Shown here: positions 15,635 through 64,000 of the stretch, piece after piece | Position numbering within the stretch: the stretch's first letter is position 1 | Layout of the letters: the number at the start of each line of letters is the position of its first letter | DNA from: Chlorokybus atmophyticus | Lineage: Eukaryota; Plantae; Mesostigma and Chlorokybus algae | Assembly: GCA_009103225.1 (NCBI GenBank) | Contig: RHPI01003578.1 | Location: 173,986 to 237,985 of the forward strand | Length of the DNA: 64,000 nucleotides | Reading direction: 5' to 3' | Translations under genes and position numbers: made by a program | Notes under the pieces: generated by a model | What the model was told of the DNA's origin: nothing | Database searches by the model: none | What the model saw: the letters and a program-made list of their open reading frames with translations, nothing else

Positions 15635-16554
15635 AGTCGTGTGATGTATGCTGCAAATACTATTTTCATTTATTTGTGTGCACATGCAATAAAAGCACAA
15701 GCAGCGGACATGGCTAGGCACGGGCAACAATCAATTATGTAGCTTAGCAACGCGCATGCAAGTGAGGCGAAAGACGGTAACTAGCAGCAAAGCAGACAAG
15801 CAGAGGTTGACTCAACCTCTACTTGTACGCTTGTGGGTCACATGCAACCACCTTAAGAGCAATGCCCTTGGTTGGGCCATAGGCGTGGTAGATAGTAGAC
15901 GACACAGCAGCGCAGAGGCAAAGTCAAGCACACTTATATGTTGATCAATCCCCCTTGGTGCTCTCATGGCTAACAAATGTGCCATTGCTGGAGCCGTTGC
16001 CCGTAAGTTGTGTTGTCTTTGTGTTAATGTAATGCGGAATTTGCTTACTTATTTACATACGTCCGACGTGTGTAGACAAGCAAGCAATTTAAATTGTCAA
16101 CATCAATAGGCAAGCTCTTTTAATCATTCAAATCATTAAGAGAGCTTATTGCAGAGTCTACGCAGACTCTATGTATTCAAGTGTGACTTGTATACGACAC
16201 CAACTTTGCTTTTCCAGTTAACTCAATAGTAATACACTTTGTTTGAGTGCACATGCTCATGATTAATATGGGGCACGCTCATACGGAGAAGGCGGAACTA
16301 CTTAATCAACCAGTTCCTATGCTTGGTAACTACCCCACACAATACAGTAGTTGCCAACTTTGAGTAGCTACGGGCCATGTTGATTACGCACGGGTTGATG
16401 TGGTTAAGGACAACAAGTGCATGCGGCAAACTCTTCATGTCGATGTCCATGCTTTGGACACAAAGAGCGTGCCATTGCAGCATAGTTGCAAGCATAATTA
16501 CTTATAAGTTGGTTGATTGTATTAAAGGGGAGAGGGGGGGGGGGGGGGGGGGGG

Positions 16555-16800
16555 NNNNNNNNNNNNNNNNNNNNNNNNNNNNNNNNNNNNNNNNNNNNNN
16601 NNNNNNNNNNNNNNNNNNNNNNNNNNNNNNNNNNNNNNNNNNNNNNNNNNNNNNNNNNNNNNNNNNNNNNNNNNNNNNNNNNNNNNNNNNNNNNNNNNNN
16701 NNNNNNNNNNNNNNNNNNNNNNNNNNNNNNNNNNNNNNNNNNNNNNNNNNNNNNNNNNNNNNNNNNNNNNNNNNNNNNNNNNNNNNNNNNNNNNNNNNNN
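16555..16800. other. Assembly gap flanked by poly-G
   Basis: N run. Confidence 0.99.
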
Positions 16801-19001
16801 GGGGGGACATGCTGCATATCAGCCTTGCTTAGTTTACTATTGTAATCGGCGTGCGCACACATGAATGTCGCATATACATAGCCAACACAAATTAAGCTAT
16901 GGATGTAATAGATTGCATGAATGCATAGGCATCTGAAGACGTTGCACATTACCAGTCAACAACATTATTGCCGCAGTCAACCGTTCATAACCCTCGATGT
17001 TGATCGAATTGGTATGATTTATACATTTTAAATCTTCAACTCCATCAACTTTAAGATTGCGTCAATCCCTAATGAGGGTATGGTCGTATCGTGGATGGCA
17101 GTATATAGCAAATTCCGGTTGTGCTATGTACGATCCAGCCGGCTTGCATTAACTATGCTACTCCCATCAGCATTTGCGCCAACACCATCATCAACACACG
17201 AATTCACACCCACAGCACATGCATATGGCAAGCAACACCGCCAATTACTCATTACTTATAGCCCAGGCATGTTGCATGTTGTGAGTGCTCATGTTGTGGG
17301 TGCCTTGCAAGACTTGTACACAGAGTCTAAGGTATACGGCATGCATGTGGTGTGCCATGTGCATGGTGCAGCGCAGTCAACTATAGCCATGTGCAGACAA
17401 CTAGGCCATGGCCTCAATCATACAACCACCCGGCTAAACTCCCTGACCTTTGATTAGCACACTACCCGGTAAGCTAGTAATACTGCCCATCAAAATCAGT
17501 CAGTCATGCATGCTTAAAGGTGTACATATTACCGGCCACAACAGCATGGTATCAGCGTCCACTCCACATTACGGCAAGGACGACCATTTTACTCCCCCCG
17601 CCGCTGCTCCAAACACCTGTACCGCCAACAACCACTGTTGCTGCGACAACTATTGTGCGCTTCAGGTGTTGTTAGCCATCGTACAGCATGCACACACATG
17701 TCATGCGCTGCCTCCATGATTGCAGCTTTGAGCTGGTGTTCTATGCACGGGCAGGCTATGCTACCAAGCAACCTGCTTCCCGTGTTGCCTTCCTCAAGAT
17801 GCTGGCTCCCTAAGCAATGGTTCGAATTGCTGGCAAAGTCGCAGCACTGCCATGCATGGCTGAACAGGGTGGGCACTAGTAGCAGCCTCCTAATCTCATC
17901 GCAAACTACGCATGCAGGCTACGACATGAGGGGAGCACGCGAGTGCCCTCATGCATTGTTCACCTATATCCTTGTTGTTGCTTGCTTGCTAATTGCTGGT
18001 TCATGCTTGCTTGCTGCCTGCGTGGTACTCATACTGATGGTGGGATACTTGGGTGTTCCTTTAACACCCCATTGTTGTATCTATTACTCATGTGTGCATC
18101 AGTCCCGTGTCAGCAACGGCAGGCATCCGCACGCGCAAAAACCATAAAGTCCGGAGTTAGCAATCTACAAGGACTGCCGGCCACAACGAACACTTGCCCC
18201 AAGGTAACTGTACAGATGATCGTATGCTAGACTAGTCACATGCAGAGTGTGAAAAAGCAACGGCACATCAATGCAACATGCAGGAATGGGCACATACCAT
18301 GCTTACACTTTGGACCAGCAGTTCACCACCGGGCTACCTACTCTACCTCACACGCTAAGCCCCTGCCTTAGTAGGCCAACCAGCATGCAAGGTGTCTCAC
18401 TGTGCCGCTTCTGTGTAGGTGAGGAGCACGCTCTTGTCCTTGCCTACTGCTACCAAAGCTGCTGAGGGGCCCAGCACGCTCTTGCTGTAACCCCTTGCTG
18501 GCTGCTGCCCTATTGCTTGATGCGCTAACGCTAAATGTATGTCTCACCTCCCTCCTACCACTGCTCCGACACTTGGCTGCTGCAGTATTGCATTTGTTGA
18601 TTGGTTTGCTTGCTGTGCTTGGCTATACTTTGCTTTGCTTGTCACCCACCAATTGCTTATGCAACATGTACACAAGGGGTATGCTGCTGTGCCAACCTGC
18701 ATGTGTTGGTGCATGAGTTGTGTGTGTGTGCACAACAAGCTGTGCATCCATTACTATACCTTGCTGTGTCAGGCTGGCAGGCTGATGGTACTTCTACGTC
18801 TACTCGTTGCAAGCCTCTAATCCACGGAAACGCTCCCAGCAGATTATCCGCAAGAAAGTGCAATGCTCGTTGCCACCGCCTGTTACCTTCCAATAGAGTG
18901 GGACATTCTTCAGCTCACCACTTATTGTCATATATGTACAGCGCATGATGCAAACGACCCTCTCCCCGCAACTGCCGCGAATGGAGGGTAACTGCTTGAT
19001 G

Positions 19002-30336: not shown

Positions 30337-33300
30337 TCATAATTGTGCCTGCAGACATCGTGCAATCTCCAATATTGCTGCATGAGGAGTAGTAGGCAGG
30401 TGGTGAGCCAGGATGGCAGCAGTGCATGTATTGTGCTGTTTGGCAGCCGCAATGGCGAAGGCAGCTTCATGTGGAGAGGGCAGCTGGTAAAACACCAGGT
30501 AGGTGTAAAAAAGGGTACGTAGCATGGCCACGGGGACCTGTTTCCCTCCGCTTCCCAGCCTCGCGGACCGCAAGAACACTCTATCATCTGGTGCACAGCC
30601 GAGCGCGTAATAAGCACTCAGAACGCCAGCTGGCGAAGCGAAGCCCAGAGTCTTGTACACTTGCTTCATGCGCACAGCAACCGCGGCGATGAAGGTTGCA
30701 TCCACCAGAGGAGCTTTGGAAGTGTTGGTTTGGGAGAAGGTGATGGCGAGGGCTATGTTGCTGACATCAAGTGACGATAGATGCACAGCGTTGCCGGCTG
30801 ATGCATCCTCAAAGCGTTGAACGACAGATGCAAACTGCTGGTAGTATAGCGCTTTCCAAGGCCGCTGCGAAGTCATTGCTTCATGCAACAGCGCTGCGTG
30901 CAACGATGCGAACACATCACCGGGAGCTTCGATGGGTATCAGCACCGACTGCGTATCTGTCGTGACAACAGGCATGTCCACCTCCTGTGCGGCGCGCTCT
31001 CGTGCAAGTACCGCCGCAGAGTGTAGGCACAGTGAAGTTATGTCACCCTGGACCGCTGTTGGCTCGCTGCAAGGCCCATCAGGAGCGCCTGCTGGCCGGA
31101 AACCCTCTCTCAGGACTGCAATGCAGGAGGCAGCCTCAGGTAACAATCGCTTGATCTTCGACTTGACATATAACGGCTTGCTGCACAGGGCTACTTCACC
31201 ACCATTATACATCACTATATCCTGCGGCCATACTTGGGGACCCAGTACCCGCACTCTTGAAACCTGCCGTGCACATTACATGTTGGTTTGACCCAACAGT
31301 TGCGCAGCGACGCATGCAACTGTGACGGCTGATTTGCAACTTGCATGTATACCTGCAGGTGATCTGGAGCAGGGCATGGCGTTGTGCGAGATAGTATTAA
31401 CGTCTCTTCATGGCTTGCTTGCAAGCGTGGATGGGATGTGACAAGCTCCAAAGGCACATGCAATGCCTGTCCTGTGTCAACATCCCTGGCTTCCACGCAG
31501 CGGGCTTCTGTTGCAAGCGCATACAGGTGCCTAAAAGCCTGTGAGTGTGGCAATGCTGAGTACCAACGTACAGATCCATGTGTAAAGGTGAAGTGTAAAT
31601 GCAGATAGGGACCTGTAGGTGACTGCGGTTGCTGCTGCAGTTCTGAGGGAACCGTGGATACAATGCAATGACCAGGTATGCAATCGCCTCATTGCTGCGG
31701 GAAAAGGTCTTCGTCCCGCCGCCCATGAACAGAAACCCCAAAGCCATTGATGCGGCCATGTGACTGCCATAATTAGCTCCATTGGCCACGTTACCGGCAG
31801 AACCCTGCAAGCATGTCAACCAATAATCATGTGTGCATCTGAACGGCGACCCATGTAGCATTGCATGATACTACTGGCATGTATACCTGAGCTACACCAT
31901 CCAGTCTCTGCGCAACAAGCCTGAGCAGCTTGAGAGTTGTGAGGTCCCCACTGCCGGCCATGACCACGCCCAACGATAGCGCGACAATATTGATGCATGT
32001 TTCAACGGTCACTCGGTCAACCTGATATGTTATGGTAGTGTTGGCATGCACAAGGCCGCATCAGCCCCACGGCCTGCCTCGCCTGCGTGTTGTGGGACAC
32101 ATCCTCAGCACTCAACACGGCGCATGACTCACCTTACTAGCGGGCTGCCTCTGCTTCAAGAAGTACATAAAGTACTCACACAGTACATCACGCGCGGCTG
32201 CATCCGTCGTGCCAGCATACCGCAGGCCAATAGCAAAACACGCGCCTGTAGACATGCACTGTGAGCTTTTGTTTCTGTGCGCTGCTAGCACCAACGCAAC
32301 AGCATCAGTGTCCCCTGGCCCTATCTTGAAAGCAATTGTGACAACCAATGTTGTGCAAGGCAGCTGTTGCAGCAGGCGTAACAGATTGCATAAAGTACCT
32401 GCCAGGATGTTGGCATGGGCTTGTGCAATCGCCTCCACATCAATCGACTTGTCTCCAAGTGCATTCGCCTGCAACTGCTTGAGAGTGGCATGTATAAAGG
32501 TTGGCACTTGTGACTGCACCCACTGTTTGGTTGCTCGCACAGAATCCCACATCACAAGGGACCGCGCGATTATGCGCAACAGAATGAAATCAGGCCGCAC
32601 GTAGTCCAGCGCAAAGTGTGTTGCCGGTATTGCTATGCGCTCAGCCACAGCAGCGTCATTGGTCTTCATGAACATGAGTCCCAGAGCAAGCGTAGCGCCT
32701 GGGGAAGTCACATCCAAGTTCACCAAAGGGCTCTCCAGCACCTGTTGTAGATGCGTGGTGATGTTTACAGAGCCCACATCACTCGCACATATTTCAAGTG
32801 CACATCTGATGAGAGAACACTAGACAACATGTGCTAAGGCTATACCAGGCCTCCAGAGTCGTTCTGCTCATCACTTGGTCGAAGCGGCTGGCTCAAGCCT
32901 GGGAACAGATCTCCAAACCTGATGGTGTTATCATCACGTCCTGGGCGCTTGTGCTGCAGAGGGCATGATGTATGGCCTCAGAAGACAATTACGTTATGCA
33001 GGCAGGCAAACGTAACGGGCATGCAGATGCGCTTACCAGAGGTTCCGGCCCGCCAACCATGTAATGCCCCAGCCGCTCTTCTATCTTCATGTCGGCCAGG
33101 CCTATGGCATCACGGCCTTGGCCGAGTGTTGTGAGGCCCAGTGCCAGCCCTGCTGCCAAGGCATAGGACTCCAGGTCCGCTGAAACCTCCAGGCCAGGCT
33201 TTCGACTGCACATGAGGCAACAGGTATGACTTGACAGTGAGTCGCCAATAGTCAAAATTTGAGTTATGCGCTCATCAGACCGTAGATGTGCCTTATGAAT

Positions 33301-36300
33301 TGCGGCAGCAGTATACAAGGTCGTGCGTACCCGATTTCAGCAAGCATTATCTCTGTCATCAACCGATGCGCGGTTGCTTGGAATAGCAGCCCAACTGACA
33401 ACACTGCAGCTGTCTGCAATGGGGCGACGTGTAAGTATTTATGCAGCACACAGCCCAGCTTTGCACTACATCGTAAGCAAGCTTCGAGGAGTGCCGAAAG
33501 TGTTAATCCAGAGCCACTAACAAGCGACTTTGGCACCCAAATCCTATCGCCAGTCCTTGCATGTATACAAGCTGAACGTCACAACTCTTACCTGCACCAC
33601 AGGCGACAACTCAAGCTCAGGATAGCTGCTGGGGTGCCTGGCTGGTATGTGAAGAAACAGCATCTTTGCCGTTGCCGCATCCATGGTGCCACGCTTGGCT
33701 GCTGCCATGCCCAGTAGCACTCCAACTGTTGTAGCATCGTGCTCCTGTGTGGGTATAGGTGAGATTACCTACCTGACCAAACATGTGGCCATAATCCCCA
33801 AGCAATGGTGCATTCAGTTGCAAAAAAGTTGCAGGCTACCAGCGGCTTGCTAGCATATTTACGAAAGGACTTGCAAGAGCTGAACAGCAAACCTGCGACA
33901 GGTACTGATAGACATCCGTTGCTGCCAGGACCTTCAGGTGTCCACCCAGGCCGAGTGCCATCAGCAGGCCCGCATGAGCAAAAGATGCCTCTCGTGGCCT
34001 AAACGAGGCCCATAACAGCATCACCCCACATGATTGTACGTGTTTAAATGTGGAACGCTTTGGGTCGTGCACCGTCAACTACTTACCTGTTGTACACAAT
34101 CCATGTGCGCGTAATCTTGCCAGCTGCGCTGGCGGCGACCTGCATCCCGGCAGCAGCTCCGTTATGGAACTCAGGCCAGCTGGCAAGGTCCTGCATGCTA
34201 GCTGTCAATCCTCAGTTACAATAGCAGCAAGGTAGAACTCGCCAGCATGCAGCCATTGGCAACAGCTGCAACACAGACCCATTCACAACTTGTGAGGACA
34301 AGCCGCGCTTGGAAGCGGTTTACACGCATAAGACTCGCATGCAAGCAGCACCACAGCTATGGATTTGTCATCAATTTGTCATCATACAACATTGGTAAAC
34401 CTTAATGTCGATGCGCATCTTCCGAGCATACCGTTGCTGCCACAGAGGCCCCATGTGTATCAAGGTTGATGACAGCATTTTGTTGCTTGGGGAGTCGGCC
34501 AGACAGATTCAGCTTCGGCACCGTCAAAGCCTCAGTCAATAGCGGCTGCCAGGTGCCAAGTGTAAATGCTCCTCTACCCACCTGCAAGAAAGGTAGCAGT
34601 GGTTCAGACACCACATGTGCGGAGCTAACTGACAGTTGAATTGATGGCCCAACACCTTGAAGGTGCAAACATAACAATGTGACCACGTGACATCCTTGTG
34701 CATGGAACCGGCAACTTAACCTTGCTTGAACGCTGAAGCAATGGATGTTACAACATGACCCAAGCACTGATAACAAGGGACACTACAGCATTTTGGCATG
34801 TGTGTCCAGCAGATAAGGCAAGCAGTTGACTCACCGGCAAGGCAGTTGTACGAGCTGCCAACCGCCACAGTCGTGCCTGCTGCCTCGCAACAAGGTCAGG
34901 CCCGTCACTGGCTGCAGGATTTGCATCGGTGCAAACGGGCGCAGGCAGGCTGGACTGCAGCAATGCCCGAATATCTCGTACTCTCATGTCACGCCCGAAC
35001 TGATGTGCGTCCTTGCCAACGCAAACATGCTCCATGCCATTGGAGTCAACGTTGTCCTCACCACTTGGGTTTGTTGCTGAAGCATCACCTTCAAGACCAC
35101 GAACAACAACATCAGAAGCCACTCTGGATGCTTGCATCCCAGACTAACCAGCTTGCCTGCTTCATCAATGCGAGCAGTTGGGTGGCTGCCATCACCTGGC
35201 TGCCATCTGACGTCATATGATGGTGGTAGTGGTGCCCTGCTGCACCAGCTAAAGTAGCGATGGTTTCTTGACAAGTCTTCACGTCCAATGAACAGATACG
35301 CTTCAGGTGGCCAGTCTGCAGGTGGATGTTCGCGACAGTCTTCCAAGGCCTGACCAGTGATACACGCTCAGACTGTGTATGCTAGTGACGCACTTGTTAG
35401 ACCAAGTCATGCACAATTTGCTGGTCAATTGCCTGTCGCAATGGAAGAGATACGGCCCATGGCAGTCTGTCAAGCTTGGGCCAATCAAATCTGGCATCGC
35501 TCATGGCGAGCACCGCAGCCTCAGCACCCTTCAAACACAAGCATTGGTAGAAGGAAATCACATTGGCGGACAACTGCAGCTCTGCGTTGGACGGCATAAG
35601 CTTGGGAGGTTGCAAGTTGCTCCCATGCTGAGAGTGCTTATGTTGTACGCGTCCTTTGACAGCGTACAGCAAGGCACTCTGCAGGTACGACTGCAGGCAG
35701 GGTGGGGGTGGAAGCAACAGCCGTGGGCAAGCGGTATGCAGTTGAAGCAACGGGCTATGTTGCGGAGGTAATGCAGCTTCAGGCATTGACAGGCAGCGTT
35801 GGTAGTAGTCCACGTAGTGAGTGGCATTTGCAGCGGCTGTCAATGATGATAGAAGCTCTGCCATCGCAGGCAGGTGCCTGGCCAGAGCAAAAACTATGTC
35901 CCAGCACTTTGAAACAATGATGTCTCTCATAACCTTGCAACCCTATTGCAACCAAGATGTACCTGCTGTAGAGTATATCAAGCTGCATGTCTTCAAAGAG
36001 TGCATGCAAGGCGTTGATGACGGCTAGTATGCGCTCCTCCGCCACGGGCGCTGCGACCAGTGCACTGCTGGCTGTGCAAGGTTCCATGCTGAACGGTGCG
36101 CTTGATGCAGGAGGGATGGGCATACACTTGATGGTGTTGGAGAGCGCCAGCTGTCCATGCTGCTTACTGCTCATGAGCAACTCCCAAGGAGTCTGCTGTT
36201 GGCTGTCAAAATCCATTGGCCTCCTGCTTAATACATCTTGCGCGGGGCTATCTTGAAGTATGGACATTAAGATGGCGTGCAATGCGCTGACGTAAACATC

Positions 36301-39300
36301 GTCCTCTCTGCCTGCAATAAACTTGACATCAGAGAACTAGAGATGACGTCCAGCAACAAGTTGATGGACAGGGGCTGTGTTTTAATAGATTTATGCCTTA
36401 TTGGAACAACTTGCTTCACACTTGCATTGCGTCACTACCAGATTCACTTAGGAGCCATACCACAAGAGGACTGATCAGCGACAGGTAGCAGTTTCTGCAC
36501 GATATTAAGAATTGTTGTGGTTGGCAAACATGACACGAGCGCCGCTAGCACCCTCCGCACCAGCGGTGAGACGGGCACAATGCTTGCCAGGCTTACGCGG
36601 TGTACCTGTTTTAGTTCCAATACTCAGTTTACAGGTTGGTCTTCATCTTGGCTTCAATGACATAAGCAGCTGCTTATGCGTTGTCAGCGTAGACTTGTCA
36701 TGCACTGGACCCTGGATTACCTTGCCGTCCAGCATCACAACACTCACTCGACTTTGCAAAGCATCTCGCAGCCCAATAACTCGTGAAAGGCCTGCAGTAG
36801 CACTCACGGTGCAACAGAGTTAGCACCTGTTTAGCGCACACTCATCAACAAGGAATGGATCACAGCTACTGGCACTGACTCAAACATACCACAGGTCATC
36901 ACAAACTCAATGGGACAAGCATTGTGCTGTGAAGGCAGCATAGAAGCAGGGTGCACTCAAAGGCGATGCGTACAAACTATACAAAACGTCCATGCTGAAC
37001 CAGCTCATATATAAACACACTGGCCTGAACAACCGACAGGCACAACGTACCTGCCTGCTGTATGGTTAACCCAAAAAGCTTTGTAGCTCCAACCTGTTGG
37101 TACGACACATGTTTCAAACTGCAGCACCATGCAGTTGAGGCATTGTGATCAAGCCTACTTACATGCAACAGCAGTTGTCCAGCCGGATAGACAATCAGGA
37201 GATCTCGGGGGGCATGTCCACCATCATACATGAATCTGTCGGCCCTCAGCCAGTGTGCGACCAACTATTATTGCAAGTGCAGTTTGCGGTGATCATGCTA
37301 CAGCATGCCACAATATGACACGCGGCAAGGCATGCCAAAGTGTGCCTGTTGGAAATACACAACCTGAAAGCCAAGCACTGACATCACGACTCACGTTCTG
37401 GAAGCGATCACTGCGGCAGCATCCACAGCTTTAAGACTGAAAGCAGCTCCTGTTGCATCTGCCAGGACGTGATTGCCCTTGGTGCTGATGCGAACACCAT
37501 GCAGGATGCTATGAGTATCAACATAGCAGATGACTTCGTGTAGGTCCTCATCGTGCACCACCATCACCTGCAGCAGTGTGCGCAACATTGCCCAACATAG
37601 ACCCAACTTGCGAGAACATGTTTATATCAGACAATCAAGCATGTACCTTGCTTGTAGGCCCAGTGCCATAGTCTTTCGTCTCCTGCCATACTGGAAAGGC
37701 AATGGCCTCGCTCTGTTGCAGCTCCAAGACTGGGCCAACTGGTTTCTCAAAGTCACTGTGTTTACTTGCTGTGTGGAGTGACAGCCTCCAAAGAGCATGC
37801 CGTTGTAACCCTGTGCAACGTGCGTGTGTTAGTTGATAGGTTGTGCGTGTGGTCAAGACTGTTTATTACGTACTCACTTGAACTATGTGTCATGAACAGG
37901 GACATCCGCAAAGAGCTCCAAACAACCACTTCATTATTGTGTCCGGATATGTTGCCCTCGGGTAATCTGCCAGCTTCTTGTCTCATAATGACTGGCTGTT
38001 ACAAACGCAGAAATTGAGTGTGCCATGAGTGCAACCGTACGCACCACACTTCACGAGCTATCTGCCTTGGCATTACTGAAGCTTCTGGGTATCAACACCT
38101 GTAAGTCTTCCAAAGGATGTAACAGCACATACACTGCACCACTTGCACCAGCAGCCATACTGGTCAGAGATGGCAGTTTGGCATGCGCAGTCGAGTTCCC
38201 ATCCAAAGTTTGTTGCACAAGTAACCCTTGCTGCAGTGGGAACATGGCTTGAGGCATGAAAGGAACCGGCAAAGTGTGAAGAACACCTGACAGATGACAT
38301 GGTATAGTGGTTGCTTGACACAAAACACCAGTGCGCAGCGGTTTAATTCAAAACATGGCTGGTCATTGTACCATCCGGGCCATAGGTGGTGATGGCATCA
38401 GCATGCAACATGCACAAGTAGTTTGCAACACCGCCGCCATCAAAGGTTGCCCAAGTAGCCTGCGATGCAATGAGTGTTGTCAAGAGAAGCCCCGGATGGG
38501 GCACTCCGCATACCTAAGCATGCATTCAGACCAACTGCATGCCAGTTCAACCTGTAGCACTGTCGACGGTAGTTTGAATCGCATATGCACATGGCGATCG
38601 GCGCTCCATGTCACGCTGCACGGAAGCCGTAGAGTTGTATGACATTTGCATTGTTACCAGACATAGCAGCATTTGCGTGTGGCAAGGTCAAGGGTAGTAA
38701 GTGGGATGCAACGCATGTTGCGCATAATAAGTGAACCGTGCTTCTTCTGGTTGACACATAACGAGTACGTATGCAGTCACTACACTCAGTTGCCGTGTAC
38801 GTGTGCATGCAAGCACAGTACCACAGCAGTCTAGCTGCGAGGCTACAGATTGTCGTTGCAAGCAACCTAGCAGTGGCGACGATGACCGGCATTGCTTGAA
38901 GACTGTCGCTTCAAGCAATGCACTGGCATGCATGCCGCAAGTTGTATGGATGTCTGTGTACAATACCAACCTGCGCTCTCTGCCTCACTAAAACCTCAGT
39001 CGAAGAAGGTGAGGCTTTATACGTTGAGATAGGTATGCCTTAGCGTAGCTAACTTGCTTACCTGCTTGCGAGCAAGTAAAGCTCCTCTTCAGCAGGCTCA
39101 CAGGCTTGAGAAGAGTGCGAGGGTGTGTTGGAGTCTCTCGCCCTACTGAGAGACTCAAACAGCGTGTAGGTGCCTCCAGGCCCAGCTGAGACGGCGCCAT
39201 TGGGCTCAAATGCACCAAGGCTTCTCAACGCAATGGCAGGAACGTCGCCGCCGCTGCTACCCACCACGCCGCTGCTGTCCTCTACGTCGTCCTCCATCTC

Positions 39301-47952: not shown

Positions 47953-48290
47953 TGTAAGGAGAGGGGGTACTCCCTTCTCCCTTTAATCCCCTACCCCAAC
48001 ACCACCACCAGCCACGATGCCCACGACGCCGCCGCCAGGGGGAACTGCCGAAGCAGAAGATCTTCTGGCTATGGCGGTCGCTGCGTTAGCAGCGCCGCCA
48101 TGCGGCTGATATCGACATGAGACATGAGTCTCATGTCGATATCAGTGTTACAGATAAGTAACACTACATTAGGGCCTTAATATAAGTTAACGGCCTTAAT
48201 ATGGCTTAATAGGCTGTATAATCCCGTTGGGACCCTTATTCAATCCTAAATAACGGCGGGGAACCTCTATGGAGGTAGCACACCGTTACA
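47953..48290 (-). mobile_element. Solo LTR of the same family as 4291-4958
   Basis: TGTAAGG...CCGTTACA, sharing GGCTATGGCGGTCGCTGCGTTAGCAGCGCCGCCATGCGG and other blocks with the 4614-4958 copy. Near-TSD ATATA/ATGTA. Orientation inferred from the PPT of the other copies. Confidence 0.85.
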
Positions 48291-48354
48291 ATGTACATGT
48301 TCAATTGTTAAAACATGGTTATAAACATGTTATGCAAATATGCGGTGTTGTCGC

Positions 48355-48404
48355 GCGATGATTGAATAACGCCACAATGCATTGTGGCGCTATTCAATCG
48401 TCGC
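48355..48404. repeat. Near-perfect ~45-bp palindrome
   Basis: GATTGAATAACGCCACAATGCATTGTGGCGCTATTCAATC. Confidence 0.8.
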
Positions 48405-48937
48405 ACATATAGCCGCCAAGTACACTTCGTGCTTTTGTGGCCATATAATTCGATTATAATTTTTTATATATATCATAAGTCATCAGTGCGCTGTATTGTA
48501 TCATCGCCTTTGTAATAACAACCGCTCCTTCAACCAAATCTTGTACTTGTGAAATCTCATATGTGCTAGATATCAAGCGCGATACTATACAACTTTCACA
48601 GCGAAGTAACTGATTATATTTTAATATTGAAGTATAATGCAAAGTTTGAAGGAGAGAGGATGGTTGATGCAAAGATATTTGCCATACTGTAAACAATTGT
48701 GACAAGATGTGATGATTAATAATAGTTCTTCTCCATTGCATTTGTTCGTGTAACATGTTTCATACCGTATAACACATGTTACACTGGGCTTGAAACTCAA
48801 TAATGGTCATATCAACAATTGACGGTTTGATCGTTAATTGCTACACACTTGCAGTCCGCATCACTCACACTACGTCCAAATACATTGATGCCATGTATGT
48901 TTGTTGGAGAATTGCTTCAAACGACAGCCCCCCCCCC

Positions 48938-49404
48938 NNNNNNNNNNNNNNNNNNNNNNNNNNNNNNNNNNNNNNNNNNNNNNNNNNNNNNNNNNNNNNN
49001 NNNNNNNNNNNNNNNNNNNNNNNNNNNNNNNNNNNNNNNNNNNNNNNNNNNNNNNNNNNNNNNNNNNNNNNNNNNNNNNNNNNNNNNNNNNNNNNNNNNN
49101 NNNNNNNNNNNNNNNNNNNNNNNNNNNNNNNNNNNNNNNNNNNNNNNNNNNNNNNNNNNNNNNNNNNNNNNNNNNNNNNNNNNNNNNNNNNNNNNNNNNN
49201 NNNNNNNNNNNNNNNNNNNNNNNNNNNNNNNNNNNNNNNNNNNNNNNNNNNNNNNNNNNNNNNNNNNNNNNNNNNNNNNNNNNNNNNNNNNNNNNNNNNN
49301 NNNNNNNNNNNNNNNNNNNNNNNNNNNNNNNNNNNNNNNNNNNNNNNNNNNNNNNNNNNNNNNNNNNNNNNNNNNNNNNNNNNNNNNNNNNNNNNNNNNN
49401 NNNN
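48938..49404. other. Assembly gap between poly-C and (AG)n
   Basis: N run. Confidence 0.99.
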
Positions 49405-49416
49405 AGCAATGCTACA

Positions 49417-49470
<54 letters not shown>

Positions 49471-50086
49471 CCAGGGGGGCGGGGGAGGGCGGAGGATGCA
49501 AGCGTGAATGCAGTGTTGATATTGGTCAACCAGTACCTCCACAACATCACCCACCACAAGCACCGCAGCACCACAATCATTCATACGTAATCAAAACTAT
49601 GAGTACGTGAAACATTTTACTTAACATACCTCCGTGTGATGAATTGCCGCAATTCCCGCTAGCTTACGGTCCACTGCGAAAAGTTCTTGGCAATACAATA
49701 CTACCAAGCATAGAAACCATGACAAGCTGACATCAAAAGGCAGGCATATGACATTTGCGAGTGCTCACGATGCATATGTGAGCTGCACGCGGTCACACTC
49801 AGTCTGTCTCGAGCACCACAGCACACATGACATGGAGAACAACGTGGCACGTAGCCAACGAGCACAACTGTGGTTGACACCTTCAGTACTGCCAGCTCAA
49901 CTCTGGGCAAAGCAGACCGGCACTACCACCAAGTGTTGAGGTGTACATGATGTACACGCTTCACCATGGCAGTCTCAAAGCAATCAAGTCTGCAGCAAAG
50001 TTGTAGTGCTGTGGATGCACGACTAACAATGCTGAGGTTGTTTGTCAAACTAGGATTGTGTCAGTCACCAGTTGACTGAATGCAGT

Positions 50087-56170: not shown

Positions 56171-59100
56171 AAGGATAGCTTTTAAGCTATGATGCCTATA
56201 TGCAATGTAGGGTTGTGATGGCTTGCTGTCAAGCTTGTCGTGTCTACTGTCTGACACACTTGACGGCATATTTTTAGCGTATCTACTACTCTTACAGCAG
56301 TCAGTGAAGTGGAGAGGTGTCTCTGAGTGGTCTCAAAAGGCTGATGGCCTAAGTTCGGACGGCTGAAAATGGCTGCTTTTCAGCCTGTTCTGGCGGTTTG
56401 CCGGCCTCTGACCGCCCTGAGTCTGTGTTGACGTGCTTTGCTGGCCATTTGAAGCCTGTGACGTGCCTTTCAACCTCGCCGCCATCGCCGCAGCGGTTGG
56501 TGGCGAGGTTGTTGTTGTTGTTGGCTGTCCGAATTTAGGCGTTGTGGTAGGCGCCCGCTACGTTGTTGCCTTCATAGCCGTCTTGTGGGGTCGAAGCGCT
56601 CGGCCCGCCAGTCCCGCCGCCACCATGGTGTGTCCTGCTGTCTCTGCTTGCGCCTGGGGTTGTCTGAAACCCTCAACCTGCCGTTGCCTGTGCCTTGCAT
56701 GCACTCTGTGTGTGTGTGTGTGAAGCGTGTTTGTGTTGGTCATTGTGGTGATTGTCTTGTTGTGTGTGTCGTTGTGGTGGTTGTTTGTGTTGGTCTTCTT
56801 CTGTGGTCTTCGGCTTCGGCTGTTGTCTCGTAGGGTGCATGCAAGGTCTTGCTGTTGTTGTGTTGGCCTTTTGTTGTTGTGTTGATGGTGGGTTTGTAAA
56901 GCTGCTGTTGACTGTGACTGTGCAGTGCAGTGCAGGTGTGCTAGCCACTGTGCTAGCCAGGCAGTCCTAACTGGAGTGCTGTGATGCCCTGGCCCAGGTG
57001 ACCCCTGTACATAGCCACTCTGGTAATGTACATCCCCACCCTCGTCATATTCTGTCCAATGCATGCATGCTGCATTGCCAATTGTCTGTTTGCTAGACTG
57101 CACATTGGTCACATTCAGGGTGTGCATTGCATTCATGTGCCTTTGTGCATTGCTTTCACAACACAGCAGGTGCATTCACATTATGGTTGTGCATTGCACT
57201 CATTGTGCATAGGCAAAGCACAAGTAGTGCATGGCAGCTATGTACATGGCAGTGTATGTCCGAATCCAATAGAACTAGCGGAGACCTCTAGCTGCCTGCT
57301 TGAGGTGAAGCAAGGTTCGGGCTGGAGTTGTGTTAGCAATTGCAGCATCAACCACTGCATTGGCCTGCTGCATGTGTCTGGCTGTTGGGGACATGGACAG
57401 ATATCGCGCGGGCTGCGGGCTGCATGTGGGGCTTGGCTGTGGTGTGAGGTTGCGCAGAGGGTCCCTTAGGTAGACTGCATCTTGGGCCTGCGACGCCAAG
57501 TCGATGATGCAAGGCCTCGCCTAAGTGGGCGCGGACGCGGTCGGACACTTTATTCGGCCGCCTCCCACTTAACTCGCGGACCTCGCAAACACCAGCAGCC
57601 AGGCCCCGAAATTTTCGGGGGGCTGGCCGGCCGCTTCCTGTCGACGCAGGGGCTGTCGGCGCCGCCTCTGACAGCCGCCGACAGCGCGTTCGCCGTCATG
57701 CGCCTGCGGTAGCGAACGCGGAAGCTTTTGGCTCGAGCCCAAGCTTCCGTACTCAGCTCCGTTGGCACCACGGCTGAGGCGGCCTCCAGGAGGAGCTGGA
57801 GCACGGTGATGGGACGGCGGCGGCGGCCGCCGCGGCCACTACCACCGACGCCGTTTGGTGGGGCGGCGGTCTTGTCATATGAGTTATCATGCGTTGCGGT
57901 AGTCGTAGCAAGTGCGCTGCTAGTATTAGTGGTAGGTAGAGCACCCTTTTTACGCCCTCTCGCCATGCATGAGTTATTACGGCCACCACTTTCAAGGTAC
58001 ATTGCGGTATCTTATCATCCTCTTCCTCTGCCTCTTCCTCTGCCTCTTCCTCATACGCAATTATACCCTTGTCTCTTACACACTCATGCGCACACACAAC
58101 AACTACCATGGCACACTCGCATGATATCATACTCACAGTCAGTCTCTTATCTTTATATCACACACGCATACAATGTCACTCACGTTTCATCCCTCACACA
58201 CTCAGTCACACATTTGGTCACTCCCCAATGCATTCGCACTCACAGTTAGTAACTCTCAAACGAACGCATTCACACACCCACACGCAGTCAATCACTCATG
58301 CACTTGGTCTCACACTCAATCACTCAATCACACAAGCACACTCCCACTCAGGGACACATGTAAGCACGCACGCAGTCACTCGCACGCTCAGGCATACACT
58401 TGCGCACACGCACACGTACGCCTACCCACCCACCCACACATATATTCACACAAATTTAGCGTACAGTCATGGTCACAACCACGCACGCACAATGAACGTT
58501 ACAAGACGTAACGTGCATAAAGTTGTAATGTTGCTGATGCATATTTACTCATAAAGACTTTGATGAGATCATTGCGGATAAGGCTGCTTCGCGACGCGAC
58601 TTGACGTCCAAGTCATATGTAAGTCATCGCAAAATATAAATGGTTTCTTGCAAATTACCCCAAGACTGGCAGCTCACGCGAGACACCAACACCCAACGAC
58701 CTTACGGGTGACGCTGGGTTGGCATTAGCAACTAAATACTTGCGATGGGTCGCTCACAACGTGCCAGGGCTTGACTATTCGCGCAAGCTTATGGCATGGG
58801 TAAACACTCGTATTTTGTTTAATTGAACGAGCAATGTGTGCAGCTATGGTATGAATTGTAATAATATTATTGCGTTGCAGACGGAGAGCACCTTTTATGG
58901 CATGCATGCCGCCCTGCAAGTGCGCTACCAAATTTCACAAGTGCGATTGCAAGGGATGAGCATCGTCGACAAGAGTAAAGACAACCTAAAGCTATTATCA
59001 TTGCGACCTTATGCTACCGTCCACCAGACAGCAAAGGAGAACATCAAACGTCGACATGAACGGGCTGCGCGTGTTGACCTACGCAAAAATGTAAGCAATG

Positions 59101-59599
59101 CTACATTTACACAGGAGCAATGGTACACTTTCACTGATAACCTTGTGACGCGACACTGCTAAAGCAACGCATGACTTTTTGATAACAACATGGTTATAAG
59201 CATGCATTTTAGCGCTCCGACGAAGGGCGCTACACATATTTGAGCTGTCTATGCCCTTCAAAACGCGTGAAGAATATTGGTACTTCCTGATGTTTTTGTT
59301 ATTTCCATGTTGCCTTTATGTTTAATTATGTGAGCTATTGTGTTACTCATGCAATCAAGCAGGACCATCACCATACATGGTTTCTAGCCATTATGTCCGG
59401 CAATAAAACCTTGAATAATTCACAAACGATGTTTGCTGGCTTCATTTGTGCACGTGACCCGTTGGTGTCCGCAAGGTGCCTTGGCAAGGCATCTTGCGCA
59501 GCGGTTTACCGCCAACGCGAAGCCGTTCCCTGAGCCTCGACGCACCGAAGACTGGAACCTCACCGCGCTTTGGCCCGCCAATAAGGTGACATTTTACAC

Positions 59600-60385
59600 G
59601 CGCAACACATTAACCGCAATAATGCACATACACACGCACGTACTCGCACTCACACATATGCTCACGCACGCACCCACACACGCTGACACTCGTATAGCAT
59701 CAATTAAACACACGCATGCACACGCAGATGCACAAATCCGGTGCTGTGTGTGATTGAGTTACACACACGCACGCGAGCACTCACGCATACTCACGCACAC
59801 ATGTACACACACGCCAGCGCGCACTAAAACATGCACACAAATACAGCATCAGTCACAACATTGGTCTCTCACACGCGCACGCGCACACGTACGCACACTC
59901 ATATAGCATCACTGACACGCGCACGCCCGCACGCACAGCATTAATCACATGAGTATGCATAGCGTCAGTCACACACATGCACGCATAAGCAGCATCAGTT
60001 TCAAGCATACACGCACAACACCAGTCTCACATTAAACAACACTACAGTTACACATCTCTCACACAGCATAGGTCTCTCACACGCGCACGCACGCACAAGC
60101 ATCAGTCTCACACGCACGCACACACGCAGCATTAATCACATGCATAGCATTAGTCATACACATGCACGCATGCACGCACAGCATCAGCCTCTTACACACA
60201 TGCACATGAGTACGCATAGCATCAGTCACACACATGCAGGCATGCACGCTTAAGCAGCATCAGTCACAAGCACACACGCACAACACCAGTCTCACACTCA
60301 ACAACATAACCGTCACACATCTCTCACACAATATAGGTCTATCACATGCGCACGCGCGCACAAGCATCAGTTTCACACGCACGGA
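59600..60385. repeat. CA-rich minisatellite with a ~260-bp internal duplication, inside an intron of the recombinase relic
   Basis: Recurrent GCATCAGTC(T/A)CACAC motif; blocks ~59950-60120 and ~60205-60380 are homologous. Confidence 0.8.
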
Positions 60386-60979
60386 TATTATCACACGCTG
60401 ATGTGCAACTCACTCGTTCATGGCCGACATGTGCAGAGCACGAAAAACCTGTCATACGAGCAACATGCAGAGGCTTGCAAGAACTTCGACTCCTACTTGC
60501 ATCTTACTATCCAACTTGCCTTGACAGTACACGTATGTCATCGTATCTATCCGATGATGAAAATATGCTATGAACTATGAAAATACTATTACAAATACTA
60601 TACATTAAAGAGTTCAGTGCTTACATGATGTAATTAAGGAATTGCATTTACATATCGTGTGTGTACACACTTCATTGAAGTTGTGCTAGACGCGGCGGTT
60701 GTAGTAAGGTATTTGGACTTTGGAATGATTGCATACGTTGCAGGTTGTCGTCATTGATAGCATACAGTGCAATGCATTGTCATATTACGAATCGTATCAA
60801 AATTAATTTTGTTCTCAAATACAAAAAACTAATATAAAATACCCGTATTTATGTCACGTCGTATTCATAATCGTATTTCATATCGTGCAACTACGATCCG
60901 ACTTTAGGAAAGTAATGCATGCACTTTGAGTCGCAGGGGCTCAGTTTATGGATGCTGAAGGCATAGACAAGAAGGTGAC

Positions 60980-60982
<3 letters not shown>

Positions 60983-61066
<84 letters not shown>

Positions 61067-61790
61067 NNNNNNNNNNNNNNNNNNNNNNNNNNNNNNNNNN
61101 NNNNNNNNNNNNNNNNNNNNNNNNNNNNNNNNNNNNNNNNNNNNNNNNNNNNNNNNNNNNNNNNNNNNNNNNNNNNNNNNNNNNNNNNNNNNNNNNNNNN
61201 NNNNNNNNNNNNNNNNNNNNNNNNNNNNNNNNNNNNNNNNNNNNNNNNNNNNNNNNNNNNNNNNNNNNNNNNNNNNNNNNNNNNNNNNNNNNNNNNNNNN
61301 NNNNNNNNNNNNNNNNNNNNNNNNNNNNNNNNNNNNNNNNNNNNNNNNNNNNNNNNNNNNNNNNNNNNNNNNNNNNNNNNNNNNNNNNNNNNNNNNNNNN
61401 NNNNNNNNNNNNNNNNNNNNNNNNNNNNNNNNNNNNNNNNNNNNNNNNNNNNNNNNNNNNNNNNNNNNNNNNNNNNNNNNNNNNNNNNNNNNNNNNNNNN
61501 NNNNNNNNNNNNNNNNNNNNNNNNNNNNNNNNNNNNNNNNNNNNNNNNNNNNNNNNNNNNNNNNNNNNNNNNNNNNNNNNNNNNNNNNNNNNNNNNNNNN
61601 NNNNNNNNNNNNNNNNNNNNNNNNNNNNNNNNNNNNNNNNNNNNNNNNNNNNNNNNNNNNNNNNNNNNNNNNNNNNNNNNNNNNNNNNNNNNNNNNNNNN
61701 NNNNNNNNNNNNNNNNNNNNNNNNNNNNNNNNNNNNNNNNNNNNNNNNNNNNNNNNNNNNNNNNNNNNNTCTCTCTCTCTCTCTCTCTCC
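60983..61790. repeat. (CT)n microsatellite with an internal assembly gap (N 61067-61770)
   Basis: Direct observation. Confidence 0.97.
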
Positions 61791-62509
61791 CTCTGTCCCT
61801 CTCTCCCTCTCTCGCTCTCCCTCGCTTTCTCGCGCGCGCGCGTGCGCGCACGTGCATTTATGCATGCCATGGCAGGTGATAGCGCATATGGGCAATTGGA
61901 ATTGGGACGTTATGGACAAGAGCTGCCTCGAGTTTTTTAAAACCAAAAGGGCTGCTAGCAGCTGGTGGATGGCCAGGAGCTGCACAAAAGGATTTCAGCA
62001 TGTTCCGAAGCGCGCGTTTCATGATGGTTGTATCCGAGGATCGAATCGAGGTCAGTGCTTCCGTTCTTGCGGACATTGCAAAGAGCAGCAACCACCATTG
62101 TAATTTCGGAGCAGGCGTCCATACGCAGCTTGCCCAAGGTCCGTCATTACCTTACGACAATCCTTGTGCAGGACGCTGCAGCATGGTACAACCCGTTAAT
62201 CGGCACGTCATGACCGCCATGCCATCATCAGTGTCAACATGCAGGATCATGTGTTTGTAGCGTTCGAAACTATGCATGGTTACCATTGTGGTAACCATCC
62301 TTGTATGTGACATACAGCGACTTGCCACAAGCAGTTGCAACAATCGCGTTACAGTGACGTTTGGCAATTCGCAACACAGCTGCTAATGGACTTCAGAGTG
62401 CCAGCACCTTATGTATCAAGTTCATCTACCCCTAAAATAGCATTCTACTAGCTCAAGTTATCAATTGGCACAAGGCAGCTAAGGGGTCTAAGTTTTGCGT
62501 ATTAACTTC

Positions 62510-63905
62510 CCATGCATGTGGGTCAATCAAGCTGTGTACTTAAGGGGTCTTAAAGGTTCTACGTTAGTTTTTTGCACTTTAGGTACTCTTCCACCATAAT
62601 ACATGACATCTAGCCATTCAAATGCATGTGCCTCAAGTGGGTGACTTGAAACCAAGTGCCCAAACATTGTCCTGCAAATCGTGGGTTAATTCTTTACACC
62701 TTGGTCGCTAACCATACCACTCTCTCACCATATTACATGTCATCTTGCCACTCACTTGCAGGTGCCTGAGGGTGGGTGAGTCAATCTGAGTGCCATACAG
62801 GTGTTCTAAAGGTTTTAAGATAGTTTTTTGCGCCGTAAGTGCTCTTTTACCAAACTACACATCATCTTGCCACTCACTTGCATATGCGTGAGGTGGGAGT
62901 CAAGGTGAGTGCCTACAATGTGTTCTAGGCTCAATCTCAATTCTTTGCGCTTCAGGTACTCTCTTAACATGTTACATGTCATCCTGCCACTCACTTGCAT
63001 GTGCCTGAGGGTAGGTGAGTCAAGGAAAGGGCCTGAAAGGTGTTTTGCAGGTTGCAGGTTAGTGCTTTGCATTAATAATACTCTTCCACCATATTACATG
63101 TTATGTTGCCACTTGCATCATGATGTGCCAAAAGGTGGGTGAGTCAAGCTGAGTGCGTGAAAGGTGTCTTGCAAAATTTGTGTCGATTCGTTGCACTTTT
63201 ACTACTCTTCCACCATATCACATGTCATCTTACCACTCTGCTACATGTGCCTGAGGGTGGGTGAGTCAAGCTGAGTGCTAGAGTGGTGGCCTGAAGGTTT
63301 CAACATAATGTTTTGCACTTCGGGTACTCTTCCACGATGGTTCATGTTATCCTGCCACTCACCTGCATGTGCCCGAGGGTGGGTGAGTAAAGCTGGGTGT
63401 CTGCGAGGTGTCCTGAAGCTTCTAGGTCAGGTTACAATACTTCGGTTACTCTTCCACCATAATATTAATCATCGTGCCACTCCCTTGCAAGTGCCTGAGG
63501 GTGGGTGGGTGAGTGAAGGCAAGTGCCCGAGGTGTCCTAACGTAACTGGGTTGGTTTCTTATATTTTAAGCAGTCTTCTACCATATTATATGTTATCCTG
63601 CCACTTACTTGCAAGTGCATGAGGGTGGGTAAGTCAAGGCGAGTGCCTAAGAGGTGTCGTAAAGGGTTGGGTTTTTGTACTTCAAGTAATCTACCAACAT
63701 ATTATATGTTATCCTGCTTATCTAGCTGCATGTGTGCCTGAGGGTGGGTGAGTCAAGGCGAGTGCTTGAGAGGTGTCCTGAAGGTTCCGAGTTTGGTTTT
63801 TGCACTTCAGGCTACCAGTAGTACTCTTCCACCATATCACATGTTATTCTACTCACCTGCATGTGCAGGAGGGTGGGTAAGTTAAGCTAAGTGTCTGCGA
63901 GGTGT
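62510..63905. repeat. Diverged tandem satellite, about 11-12 units of ~120-125 bp
   Basis: Recurring TACTCTTCCACCATATTACATGTTATCCTGCCACTCACTTGCATGTGCCTGAGGGTGGGTGAGTCAAG; GTGCCTGAGGGTGGGTGAG-like cores near 62762, 63001, 63247, 63370, 63492, 63735. Confidence 0.9.
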
Positions 63906-64000
63906 ACATATTGTCGTGCCTGTCATGGTCGAGGGCAACCTTGTCTCGCACAGGCTGCAGAGGAGTGCTAGTGCTGCACGCATGCTAGTGCCGTGCACTG

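What the first reader, a model, noticed from the sequence alone, without database searches (positions are those of the whole stretch)
58557..62213. Hidden, intron-split Crypton-type tyrosine recombinase not visible in the ORF track
Seen: six GT-AG-bounded segments which, after correcting single-base frameshifts (e.g. CGCAAAATAT ~58625, GTTTCTA ~59380, CGTTGG ~59460), read as one collinear protein. Residues fall in the order of the YR catalytic set: R (RSDE, 59213), K (GNKT, 59405), H-x-x-R (HAL*, H 60918, TGA 60927), W (GNW, 61897) and the nucleophile position (MDKSCL, TGC at 61924 where Tyr is expected). Established: CPxGALA..RF..PFP, SY, THxxR.GA, GxW..M..YL and LQDAA are hallmarks of the NDC10-II/CryptonF YR domain, and Cryptons can carry introns and lack TIRs. 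Inference: a dead copy of a green-algal Crypton lineage, or a once-domesticated YR gene; intact relatives may exist elsewhere in this genome. One splice phase (60532 to 60908) does not match without another lesion.
Basis: partly seen in the sequence, partly recalled or inferred. Interest (0 to 1): 0.8.

Follow-up and report, generated by a model that had tools for sequence, protein, structure and literature searches.

The report
Dead Crypton-type recombinase gene remnant
This stretch is the broken, intron-split remnant of a tyrosine-recombinase gene of the kind carried by Crypton "jumping genes"; it is real but dead, and such elements are already known in green algae, so it is an ordinary find.

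Summary
All its coordinates check out: Arg 59213, Lys 59405, His 60918, TGA 60927, Trp 61897, TGC 61924, and the frameshift sites. Seven + strand exons with six GT..AG introns read as one collinear protein.

Exon-by-exon searches were blank (Pfam, PDB, 1.84 billion representatives, Atlas). One exon did fetch a metagenome contig whose 1178-aa ORF passes Pfam's NDC10_II cut-off. Searching the whole window with that protein, and with a 72%-identical relative, puts the four best hits inside the finding. They lie on the + strand and in collinear order. A spliced-alignment score of 130 compares with at most 53 in 53 control chunks. It still beats every control when the exon used for fetching is masked.

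The pieces also line up by eye with the CryptonF rows printed in Kojima & Jurka 2011.

The assembly gap lies in a (CT)n intron. The exons on both sides are in phase, and they match adjacent residues of the comparator. So no coding sequence is expected to be missing.

The gene is dead. It has at least five frameshifts, one splice-phase clash, a stop at the second catalytic Arg and Cys at the nucleophile Tyr. No start codon and no GCR1_C tail were found.

This scan has already noted Crypton copies elsewhere in this genome. CryptonF is active in Chlamydomonas. Verdict: new member of a known kind, low interest.

The parts
58556..58799 (+). Exon 1, N-terminal part. It carries a 1-nt frameshift in the A-run at about 58626-58630. 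No in-frame start codon is evident upstream.
   Evidence: Positions 58698-58769 match comparator residues 230-253 of the L001 ORF (46% over 24 aa, tblastn E 0.026 in the whole window; HMMER E 0.023). The donor is tgg|GTAAAC.
58881..59090 (+). Exon 2 (70 codons, open, phase 0 at both ends). It would form the N-terminal core-binding-type region. Homology is not shown.
   Evidence: GT..AG borders and phase agree with exons 1 and 3. No relative among 1.84 billion representatives. No supported match to the comparators.
59213..59279 (+). Exon 3. It begins with the first catalytic Arg codon (CGC 59213-15, RSDE) and ends with one base of a split codon.
   Evidence: The motif corresponds to LLR-GE.RR of CryptonF rows and to R-G-D-D of the comparators. 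There is no statistical support.
59360..59585 (+). Exon 4. It reads GPSP (59362-73), the Lys codon 59405-07 (G-N-K-T), and CPQGALARHLAQRF..PFPEP..W. Two 1-nt frameshifts lie at about 59381-86 and 59456-62.
   Evidence: Positions 59469-59573 are 43% identical over 35 aa to the NDC10_II-positive ORF of L001. HMMER E 4e-4. The split codon G|CA restores phase with exon 3 and gives GPSP as in both comparators.
59586..60436 (+). Intron 4 (851 nt), filled with CA-rich degenerate tandem repeats of 33-38 nt.
   Evidence: aag|GTGACA ... GTGCAG|agc. Phase is 0 on both sides.
60437..60532 (+). Exon 5 (LSYEQ...). It ends in phase 0, which clashes with exon 6. It is about 6 codons longer than CryptonF rows between LSY and K-x-T-H.
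   Evidence: The spacing from Trp of exon 4 to LSY is 15 residues, as in the CryF1_CI row. The match to the comparators is weak.
60908..60974 (+). Exon 6. It reads K-V-M-H-A-L-stop-V-A-G-A-Q-F-M-D-A-E-G. His is at 60918-20. TGA at 60927-29 sits where the second catalytic Arg belongs.
   Evidence: it aligns with H-A-F-R-R-G-G-A-K-Y-L-D of L001 and with T-H-A-G-R..G-A..A-E..G of CryptonF rows. Alone the hit is weak (E 5.6 in the whole window), but it lies in the right place in the chain.
60975..61875 (+). Intron 6. It holds (CT)43 at 60980-61066, the assembly gap at 61067-61769, and a CT-rich run at 61770-61831.
   Evidence: The donor is GT at 60975-76 and the acceptor is GGCAG|gtg. Both flanking exons are in phase 0. 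Comparator residues 385|386 are contiguous across the junction.
61876..62213 (+). Exon 7. It holds Trp 61897-99 (G-N-W-N) and Cys codon TGC 61924-26 at the nucleophile Tyr position (K-S-C-L against R-S-Y-L). The reading continues with LAAGGWPG, PFL and LVQDA (62163-77). Frameshifts lie at 61933-38 (T6 run) and about 62045-65. A stop is at 62211-13.
   Evidence: Positions 61919-62074 and 62061-62177 match comparator residues 546-597 and 593-634 (E 0.12 each in the whole window). HMMER E 0.058.

Best explanation
This is a pseudogene: the decayed remnant of a Crypton-type (CryptonF / NDC10_II-like) tyrosine-recombinase gene with seven exons on the + strand. It is most likely a dead copy of a Crypton DNA transposon of this alga. 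The ancestral protein would have cut and rejoined DNA through the usual Arg-Lys-His-Arg-Trp-Tyr site. It would have recombined a short motif at the element's end with a like motif at the target. This copy cannot do that. The second catalytic Arg codon is TGA and the nucleophile Tyr is Cys. At least five frameshifts and one splice-phase clash break the frame. No start codon or C-terminal DNA-binding part is found. Shown here: homology, exon layout, the lesions, and continuity across the gap. Inferred: that it was once part of a mobile Crypton, and the mechanism of the ancestor.
For: (1) One exon piece fetched metagenome contig L001. Its 1178-aa ORF scores 31.4 bits on Pfam NDC10_II against a cut-off of 26.3. 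Its relative P0001 scores 36.9 bits over residues 227-496. (2) tblastn of the L001 core against the whole window: the four best hits (E 0.003, 0.026, 0.12, 0.12) all lie in 58698-62177, on the + strand, in the same order as in the protein. The next hit elsewhere has E 2.3. P0001 gives a similar chain, though one of its four best hits lies elsewhere (43343-43179, - strand, E 0.17). (3) A HMMER profile of the two proteins against 2742 stop-to-stop pieces gives as top three 59415-59750 (4e-4), 58623-58823 (0.023) and 61883-62257 (0.058). The next is 1.8. (4) A spliced alignment scores 130 (L001) and 116 (P0001). The 53 control chunks give means of 42.3 and 42.7 and maxima of 53 and 57. With the fetching exon masked the scores are still 83 and 73. 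(5) The window pieces match, block by block and with the same spacing, the CryptonF rows of Kojima & Jurka 2011, Additional file 3. (6) The L001 core sits next to NDC10_II, DUF3435, DUF3504 and Phage_integrase clusters in the Atlas. (7) The lesions are read directly from the sequence.
Against: No window piece hits NDC10_II, GCR1_C or Phage_integrase in Pfam. Exon 2 has no relative among 1.84 billion representatives. Exons 2, 3 and the start of exon 4 are not supported by the comparators. The strongest hit (exon 4) was selected for, since the comparator was fetched with it. No element ends, no GCR1_C domain and no second copy in the window were found. So 'transposon copy' is inference. Some of the frameshifts sit in base runs and could be assembly errors.
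Confidence: 0.85

Rival explanations
1. It is a formerly domesticated Crypton-derived host gene, like Ndc10/Gcr1 in yeasts or the DUF3504 genes in animals. On this view it lost the catalytic Arg and Tyr while still serving as a DNA-binding protein, and decayed only later.
For: The two residues lost here, the second Arg and the Tyr, are the ones lost in domesticated Crypton genes (Kojima & Jurka 2011). The gene is intron-rich like a host gene. No element ends or second copy are seen in the window.
Against: The Arg is replaced by a stop, not by another residue. At least five frameshifts and a phase clash show no selection on the frame. Earlier notes of this scan, not checked here, describe intron-rich Crypton copies elsewhere in the same genome. 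So introns do not argue for a host gene.
Confidence: 0.07
2. It is a live gene that only looks broken, because the frameshifts are assembly errors in base runs next to a poorly assembled repeat and gap.
For: Three of the five frameshifts lie in or beside short runs of one base (A4 at about 58626, T3 at about 59383, T6 at 61933-38). The locus has an assembly gap and microsatellites.
Against: The TGA at the catalytic Arg and the Cys at the Tyr are substitutions, not indels. No start codon is evident. The exon 5 to exon 6 phase clash and the missing C-terminal part remain.
Confidence: 0.04
3. It is a chance resemblance: motifs picked from three frames of repeat-rich DNA with no real homology.
For: Exon-by-exon searches in Pfam, PDB, the Atlas and the large protein libraries are all blank.
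Against: The best hits of an independent NDC10_II protein in the whole window cluster here, collinear and on one strand. The chain score exceeds all 53 controls even with the fetching exon masked. Intron phases agree at five of six junctions.
Confidence: 0.04

Closest known systems
CryptonF elements of fungi and oomycetes (Goodwin et al. 2003; Kojima & Jurka 2011, PMC3212892)
   Same: The order and spacing of the conserved blocks are the same. The blocks are R-G-E, G-K-T, C-x-x-x-A-L-A..L..R-[FW], P-F, W, L-S-Y, K-x-T-H-x-x-R..G-A, I...G-x-W-N, Y-L, L-A-G-[FW], P-[FW]-[LV] and L-Q-D. His to Trp is 26 residues and Trp to Tyr is 9, as in the ascomycete rows.
   Different: This copy is split by six introns and is broken. 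No GCR1_C DNA-binding tail and no 6-bp terminal direct repeats could be found. The host is an alga, not a fungus or oomycete.
CryptonF-1_cRei of Chlamydomonas reinhardtii (Lopez-Cortegano et al. 2023, PMC9977147)
   Same: It is a CryptonF-type element in the green lineage. It shows that such elements live and move in green algae.
   Different: That element is active and has a defined end motif (CACCG) and target (CAYCG). Here there is only a dead gene remnant with no known ends. No sequence comparison with it could be made here.
Metagenome proteins L001 ORF (1178 aa) and P0001 (900 aa), both Pfam NDC10_II
   Same: These are the closest sequences found. They are 43-46% identical over exons 1 and 4, share the 8-residue string PQGALARH, and match collinearly over five or six blocks.
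   Different: They are intron-less, uninterrupted ORFs on contigs of about 75% G+C from unknown organisms. The L001 ORF keeps Arg, Lys, His-x-x-Arg, Trp and Tyr; P0001 has Cys at the His+3 position with Arg one residue later. The middle part, exons 2-3, does not match them.
Ndc10/Cbf2 and other Crypton-derived host genes (Gcr1; animal DUF3504 genes)
   Same: They share the protein fold family (NDC10_II) and the loss of the catalytic Tyr and second Arg.
   Different: Those are intact, conserved, expressed genes. This locus has stops and frameshifts and no open frame.

Membership tests
Crypton-type tyrosine recombinase (Pfam NDC10_II, PF16787) | Direct significant match of the sequence to the NDC10_II profile | tested here: not met
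   Pfam was run on 10 and then 37 stop-to-stop pieces of 58521-62596. There was no NDC10_II hit even at E up to 10. The pieces are short (20-45 in-frame residues). The joined, repaired protein was not searched, by rule.
Crypton-type tyrosine recombinase (Pfam NDC10_II, PF16787) | Collinear homology to proteins that do pass the NDC10_II cut-off | tested here: met
   The L001 ORF scores 31.4 bits and P0001 36.9 bits, against a cut-off of 26.3. The window matches fall inside their NDC10_II span. tblastn, HMMER and the spliced-alignment controls are.
Tyrosine recombinase (active enzyme) | Complete catalytic set Arg, Lys, His-x-x-Arg, His/Trp, Tyr in one open frame | tested here: not met
   Arg 59213, Lys 59405, His 60918 and Trp 61897 are present. 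The second Arg is TGA (60927) and the Tyr is Cys (61924). At least five frameshifts break the frame.
CryptonF group | C-terminal GCR1_C DNA-binding domain | tested here: not met
   No GCR1_C hit in any + strand piece up to 62596. From 62719 onward the DNA is a 122-bp tandem repeat. The window ends at 64000. The nearest comparators also show no GCR1_C hit.
Crypton transposon | No terminal inverted or long terminal repeats; short (5-6 bp) direct repeat or target motif at the ends | not testable with these tools
   The ends of the element cannot be placed from one decayed copy. No other copy or empty site is on hand.
Crypton transposon | Several related copies in the genome | not testable with these tools
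   Only this window can be read, and it holds no second copy. Earlier notes of this scan report other copies in the same genome, but I could not check them.
Domesticated Crypton-derived gene | Intact open frame kept by selection | tested here: not met
   An in-frame TGA, at least five frameshifts, a phase clash and no start codon.

The most novel reading that the evidence does not exclude
The remnant may represent a separate, intron-rich Crypton lineage of streptophyte algae. Its nearest detectable kin would be intron-less genes of uncultured, very G+C-rich organisms rather than fungal or Chlamydomonas Cryptons. That would hint at an old green-lineage clade or a transfer between distant hosts. 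Alternatively, it was once a domesticated DNA-binding gene that lost Arg and Tyr before it decayed.
Probability: 0.1. Interest if true: 0.4.

Novelty: new member of a known kind. Interest (0 to 1): 0.15.

Why it matters
It matters little by itself. It adds one dead copy to a transposon family that this scan has already met in the same genome, and that is known to be active in another green alga. It has three modest uses. It marks an unannotated repeat-derived pseudogene for masking. It shows that the assembly gap sits in a (CT)n intron and hides no coding sequence. Together with intact copies, it can also help to date Crypton activity in this alga.

Tried and rejected
Searches that came back blank:
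- Pfam on single exon pieces: nothing.
- phmmer of exon 2 against 1.84 billion representatives: no hit. In hindsight exon 4 would have been the better use of the single job.
- The search for homologous proteins on the exon 4 piece, alone and as a region of the longer open stretch: no candidates. The length filter shuts out full-length spliced proteins.
- PDB sequence search with exon 4, exon 7 and the L001 core: chance hits only, no Ndc10.
- Atlas on exon 4: nothing.
- A short degenerate DNA pattern on viral contigs: nothing.
- A scan of prokaryotic genome contigs with the comparator alignment: nothing.
Full report
WHAT IS THERE

The stretch 58556-62213 lies in eukaryotic DNA of about 50% G+C. 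An APC1 gene sits on the minus strand at about 30-36 kb.

I read seven exons on the + strand:
- 58556-58799
- 58881-59090
- 59213-59279
- 59360-59585
- 60437-60532
- 60908-60974
- 61876-62213

Six introns separate them, and all begin with GT and end with AG. Five of the six junctions agree in phase. One of these is a split codon (G|CA) between exons 3 and 4, which produces the string GPSP.

THE GAP

The N run at 61067-61769 is flanked by (CT)43 on its left and a CT-rich run on its right. It lies inside intron 6 (60975-61875). Three observations bear on it:
- Exon 6 ends in phase 0 and exon 7 starts in phase 0.
- In the comparator P0001, residues 367-385 align to exon 6 and residues 386-393 to the start of exon 7, with no residue left over.
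- The spacings His-to-Trp (26) and Trp-to-Tyr position (9) equal those in the ascomycete CryptonF rows of Kojima & Jurka 2011.

So no coding sequence is expected to be hidden in the gap. Its true length remains unknown.

EXON-BY-EXON SEARCHES

All searches used single pieces by reference, and all were blank:
- Pfam on 10 and then 37 pieces
- phmmer of exon 2 against 1.84 billion representatives
- two word-based searches with exon 4
- PDB
- the Atlas

The window holds no second copy. I left that step out.

COMPARATORS

A reference-based metagenome scan with the exon 4 piece found one contig, L001. It is 4.6 kb and about 75% G+C. Its 1178-aa ORF passes Pfam's NDC10_II cut-off at 31.4 bits against 26.3.

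A search with that ORF found P0001. It is 900 aa, 72% identical to the L001 ORF, and scores 36.9 bits on NDC10_II over residues 227-496. In the Atlas the L001 core sits next to clusters carrying NDC10_II, DUF3435, DUF3504 and Phage_integrase. These are the eukaryotic Crypton-type recombinases and their kin.

TESTS OF HOMOLOGY

tblastn of the L001 core (481 aa) against the whole window, all six frames, gave these four best hits:

| Window position | E-value |
|---|---|
| 59469-59573 | 0.003 |
| 58698-58769 | 0.026 |
| 61919-62074 | 0.12 |
| 62061-62177 | 0.12 |

All four are on the + strand and in the order of the protein. The next hit elsewhere has E 2.3. P0001 gives a similar picture, though one of its four best hits lies elsewhere (43343-43179, - strand, E 0.17). 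Exon 6 (60918-60974) also matches at the right place, but weakly.

A HMMER profile of the two proteins was run against all 2742 stop-to-stop pieces of the window. It ranks 59415-59750 (4e-4), 58623-58823 (0.023) and 61883-62257 (0.058) first. The next piece has E 1.8.

I also wrote a spliced protein-to-DNA alignment. At a jump penalty of 25 the scores are:

| Query | This region | 53 control chunks (mean, maximum) | Region with the fetching exon masked |
|---|---|---|---|
| L001 core | 130 | 42.3, 53 | 83 |
| P0001 core | 116 | 42.7, 57 | 73 |

The control chunks come from both strands of the window. The comparator was fetched through exon 4, so that hit is not independent. With that exon masked, the region still beats every control.

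The middle part, exons 2, 3 and the first third of exon 4, is not supported by these two proteins. It rests on intron phases and on the motifs RSDE, GPSP and G-N-K-T.

COMPARISON WITH PUBLISHED CRYPTONS

Additional file 3 of Kojima & Jurka 2011 prints CryptonF proteins. By eye, the window pieces follow them block by block:

| CryptonF block | Window reading |
|---|---|
| LLR-GE | RSDE |
| GKT-NQ | GNKTLNN |
| C...ALA.YLF.RW, then P.F and W | CPQGALARHLAQRF, PFPEP, W |
| LSY | LSY, at the same distance (15) from that Trp |
| KKTHAGR..GA..AE..G | KVMHAL-stop-VAGAQFMDAEG |
| I...GRW-N.D....C-YL | IAHMGNWNWDVMDKSCL |
| LAGF | LAAGGW |
| LQD | VQDA |

This comparison could not be scored with a tool, because the published rows cannot be typed in.

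STATE OF THE GENE

The gene is dead. The lesions are:
- Frameshifts at about 58626-30, 59381-86, 59456-62, 61933-38 and 62045-65.
- A phase clash at the exon 5 to exon 6 junction.
- TGA where the second catalytic Arg belongs. Both L001 and the fungal rows have H-x-x-R there.
- Cys where the nucleophile Tyr belongs (K-S-C-L against R-S-Y-L).
- No evident start codon.
- No GCR1_C domain.

Downstream, a 122-bp tandem repeat begins at 62719. Some frameshifts lie in base runs and could be assembly errors. The stop and the Cys are substitutions and cannot be explained that way.

INTERPRETATION

This is the remnant of a Crypton-type tyrosine-recombinase gene, most likely a dead transposon copy. That it was mobile is inferred, because no ends and no other copy can be seen from this window.

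Earlier notes of this scan report several Crypton copies, some intact and transcribed, on other DNA of the same genome, which they call Chlorokybus. I could not check those notes. CryptonF elements are described and active in the green alga Chlamydomonas (PMC9977147). No paper in the library mentions Crypton together with Chlorokybus.

The rival readings are a decayed domesticated gene, a live gene spoiled by assembly errors, and chance. All three are unlikely, for the reasons given under their entries.

VERDICT

This is a new member of a known kind and of low interest.

Noticed in passing
window 62719-63900 (to near the window end): A tandem repeat of about 122-124 bp, with at least 5.8 copies at 70-75% match, starts about 500 bp downstream of the remnant. 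It may have replaced, or may border, the 3' part of the element.
   Followed up: partly
window 59600-60400 and 58000-58480: There are CA-rich, degenerate tandem repeats (units of 33-38 nt, CACGCACGC-like) inside intron 4, and similar CA-rich DNA just upstream of exon 1. They create long false open frames rich in Thr and His.
   Followed up: partly
window 30337-36336, minus strand: Pieces of an anaphase-promoting complex subunit 1 (APC1) gene are present. PC_rep scores 35 bits at 32115-32819, and there is a weak APC1_C hit at 30340-31275. This is an ordinary host gene.
   Followed up: partly
window 478-1137, minus strand: There is a weak xyloglucan fucosyltransferase (XG_FTase) hit of 19 bits, below the cut-off. 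If real, it fits a streptophyte host.
   Followed up: no
window 58556-62213: Observed/expected CpG is about 1.0 in the exons and the whole remnant, against 0.68 for the whole window. So the remnant shows no CpG depletion.
   Followed up: partly
L001:346-3879 and L002:10001-12703: Two metagenome contigs (L001 about 75% G+C) carry uninterrupted ORFs of 1178 and 900 aa with an NDC10_II domain; L001 keeps an apparently complete catalytic set, while P0001 has Cys at the His+3 position. They share the 8-residue string PQGALARH with the window. The organisms are unknown, and the neighbouring genes have no Pfam match.
   Followed up: partly
window 48001-50000 and 16001-18000: There are two low-G+C islands (0.34 and 0.41) in a window that is otherwise about 0.50-0.55. 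The window also holds about 830 N letters outside the gap of this finding.
   Followed up: no
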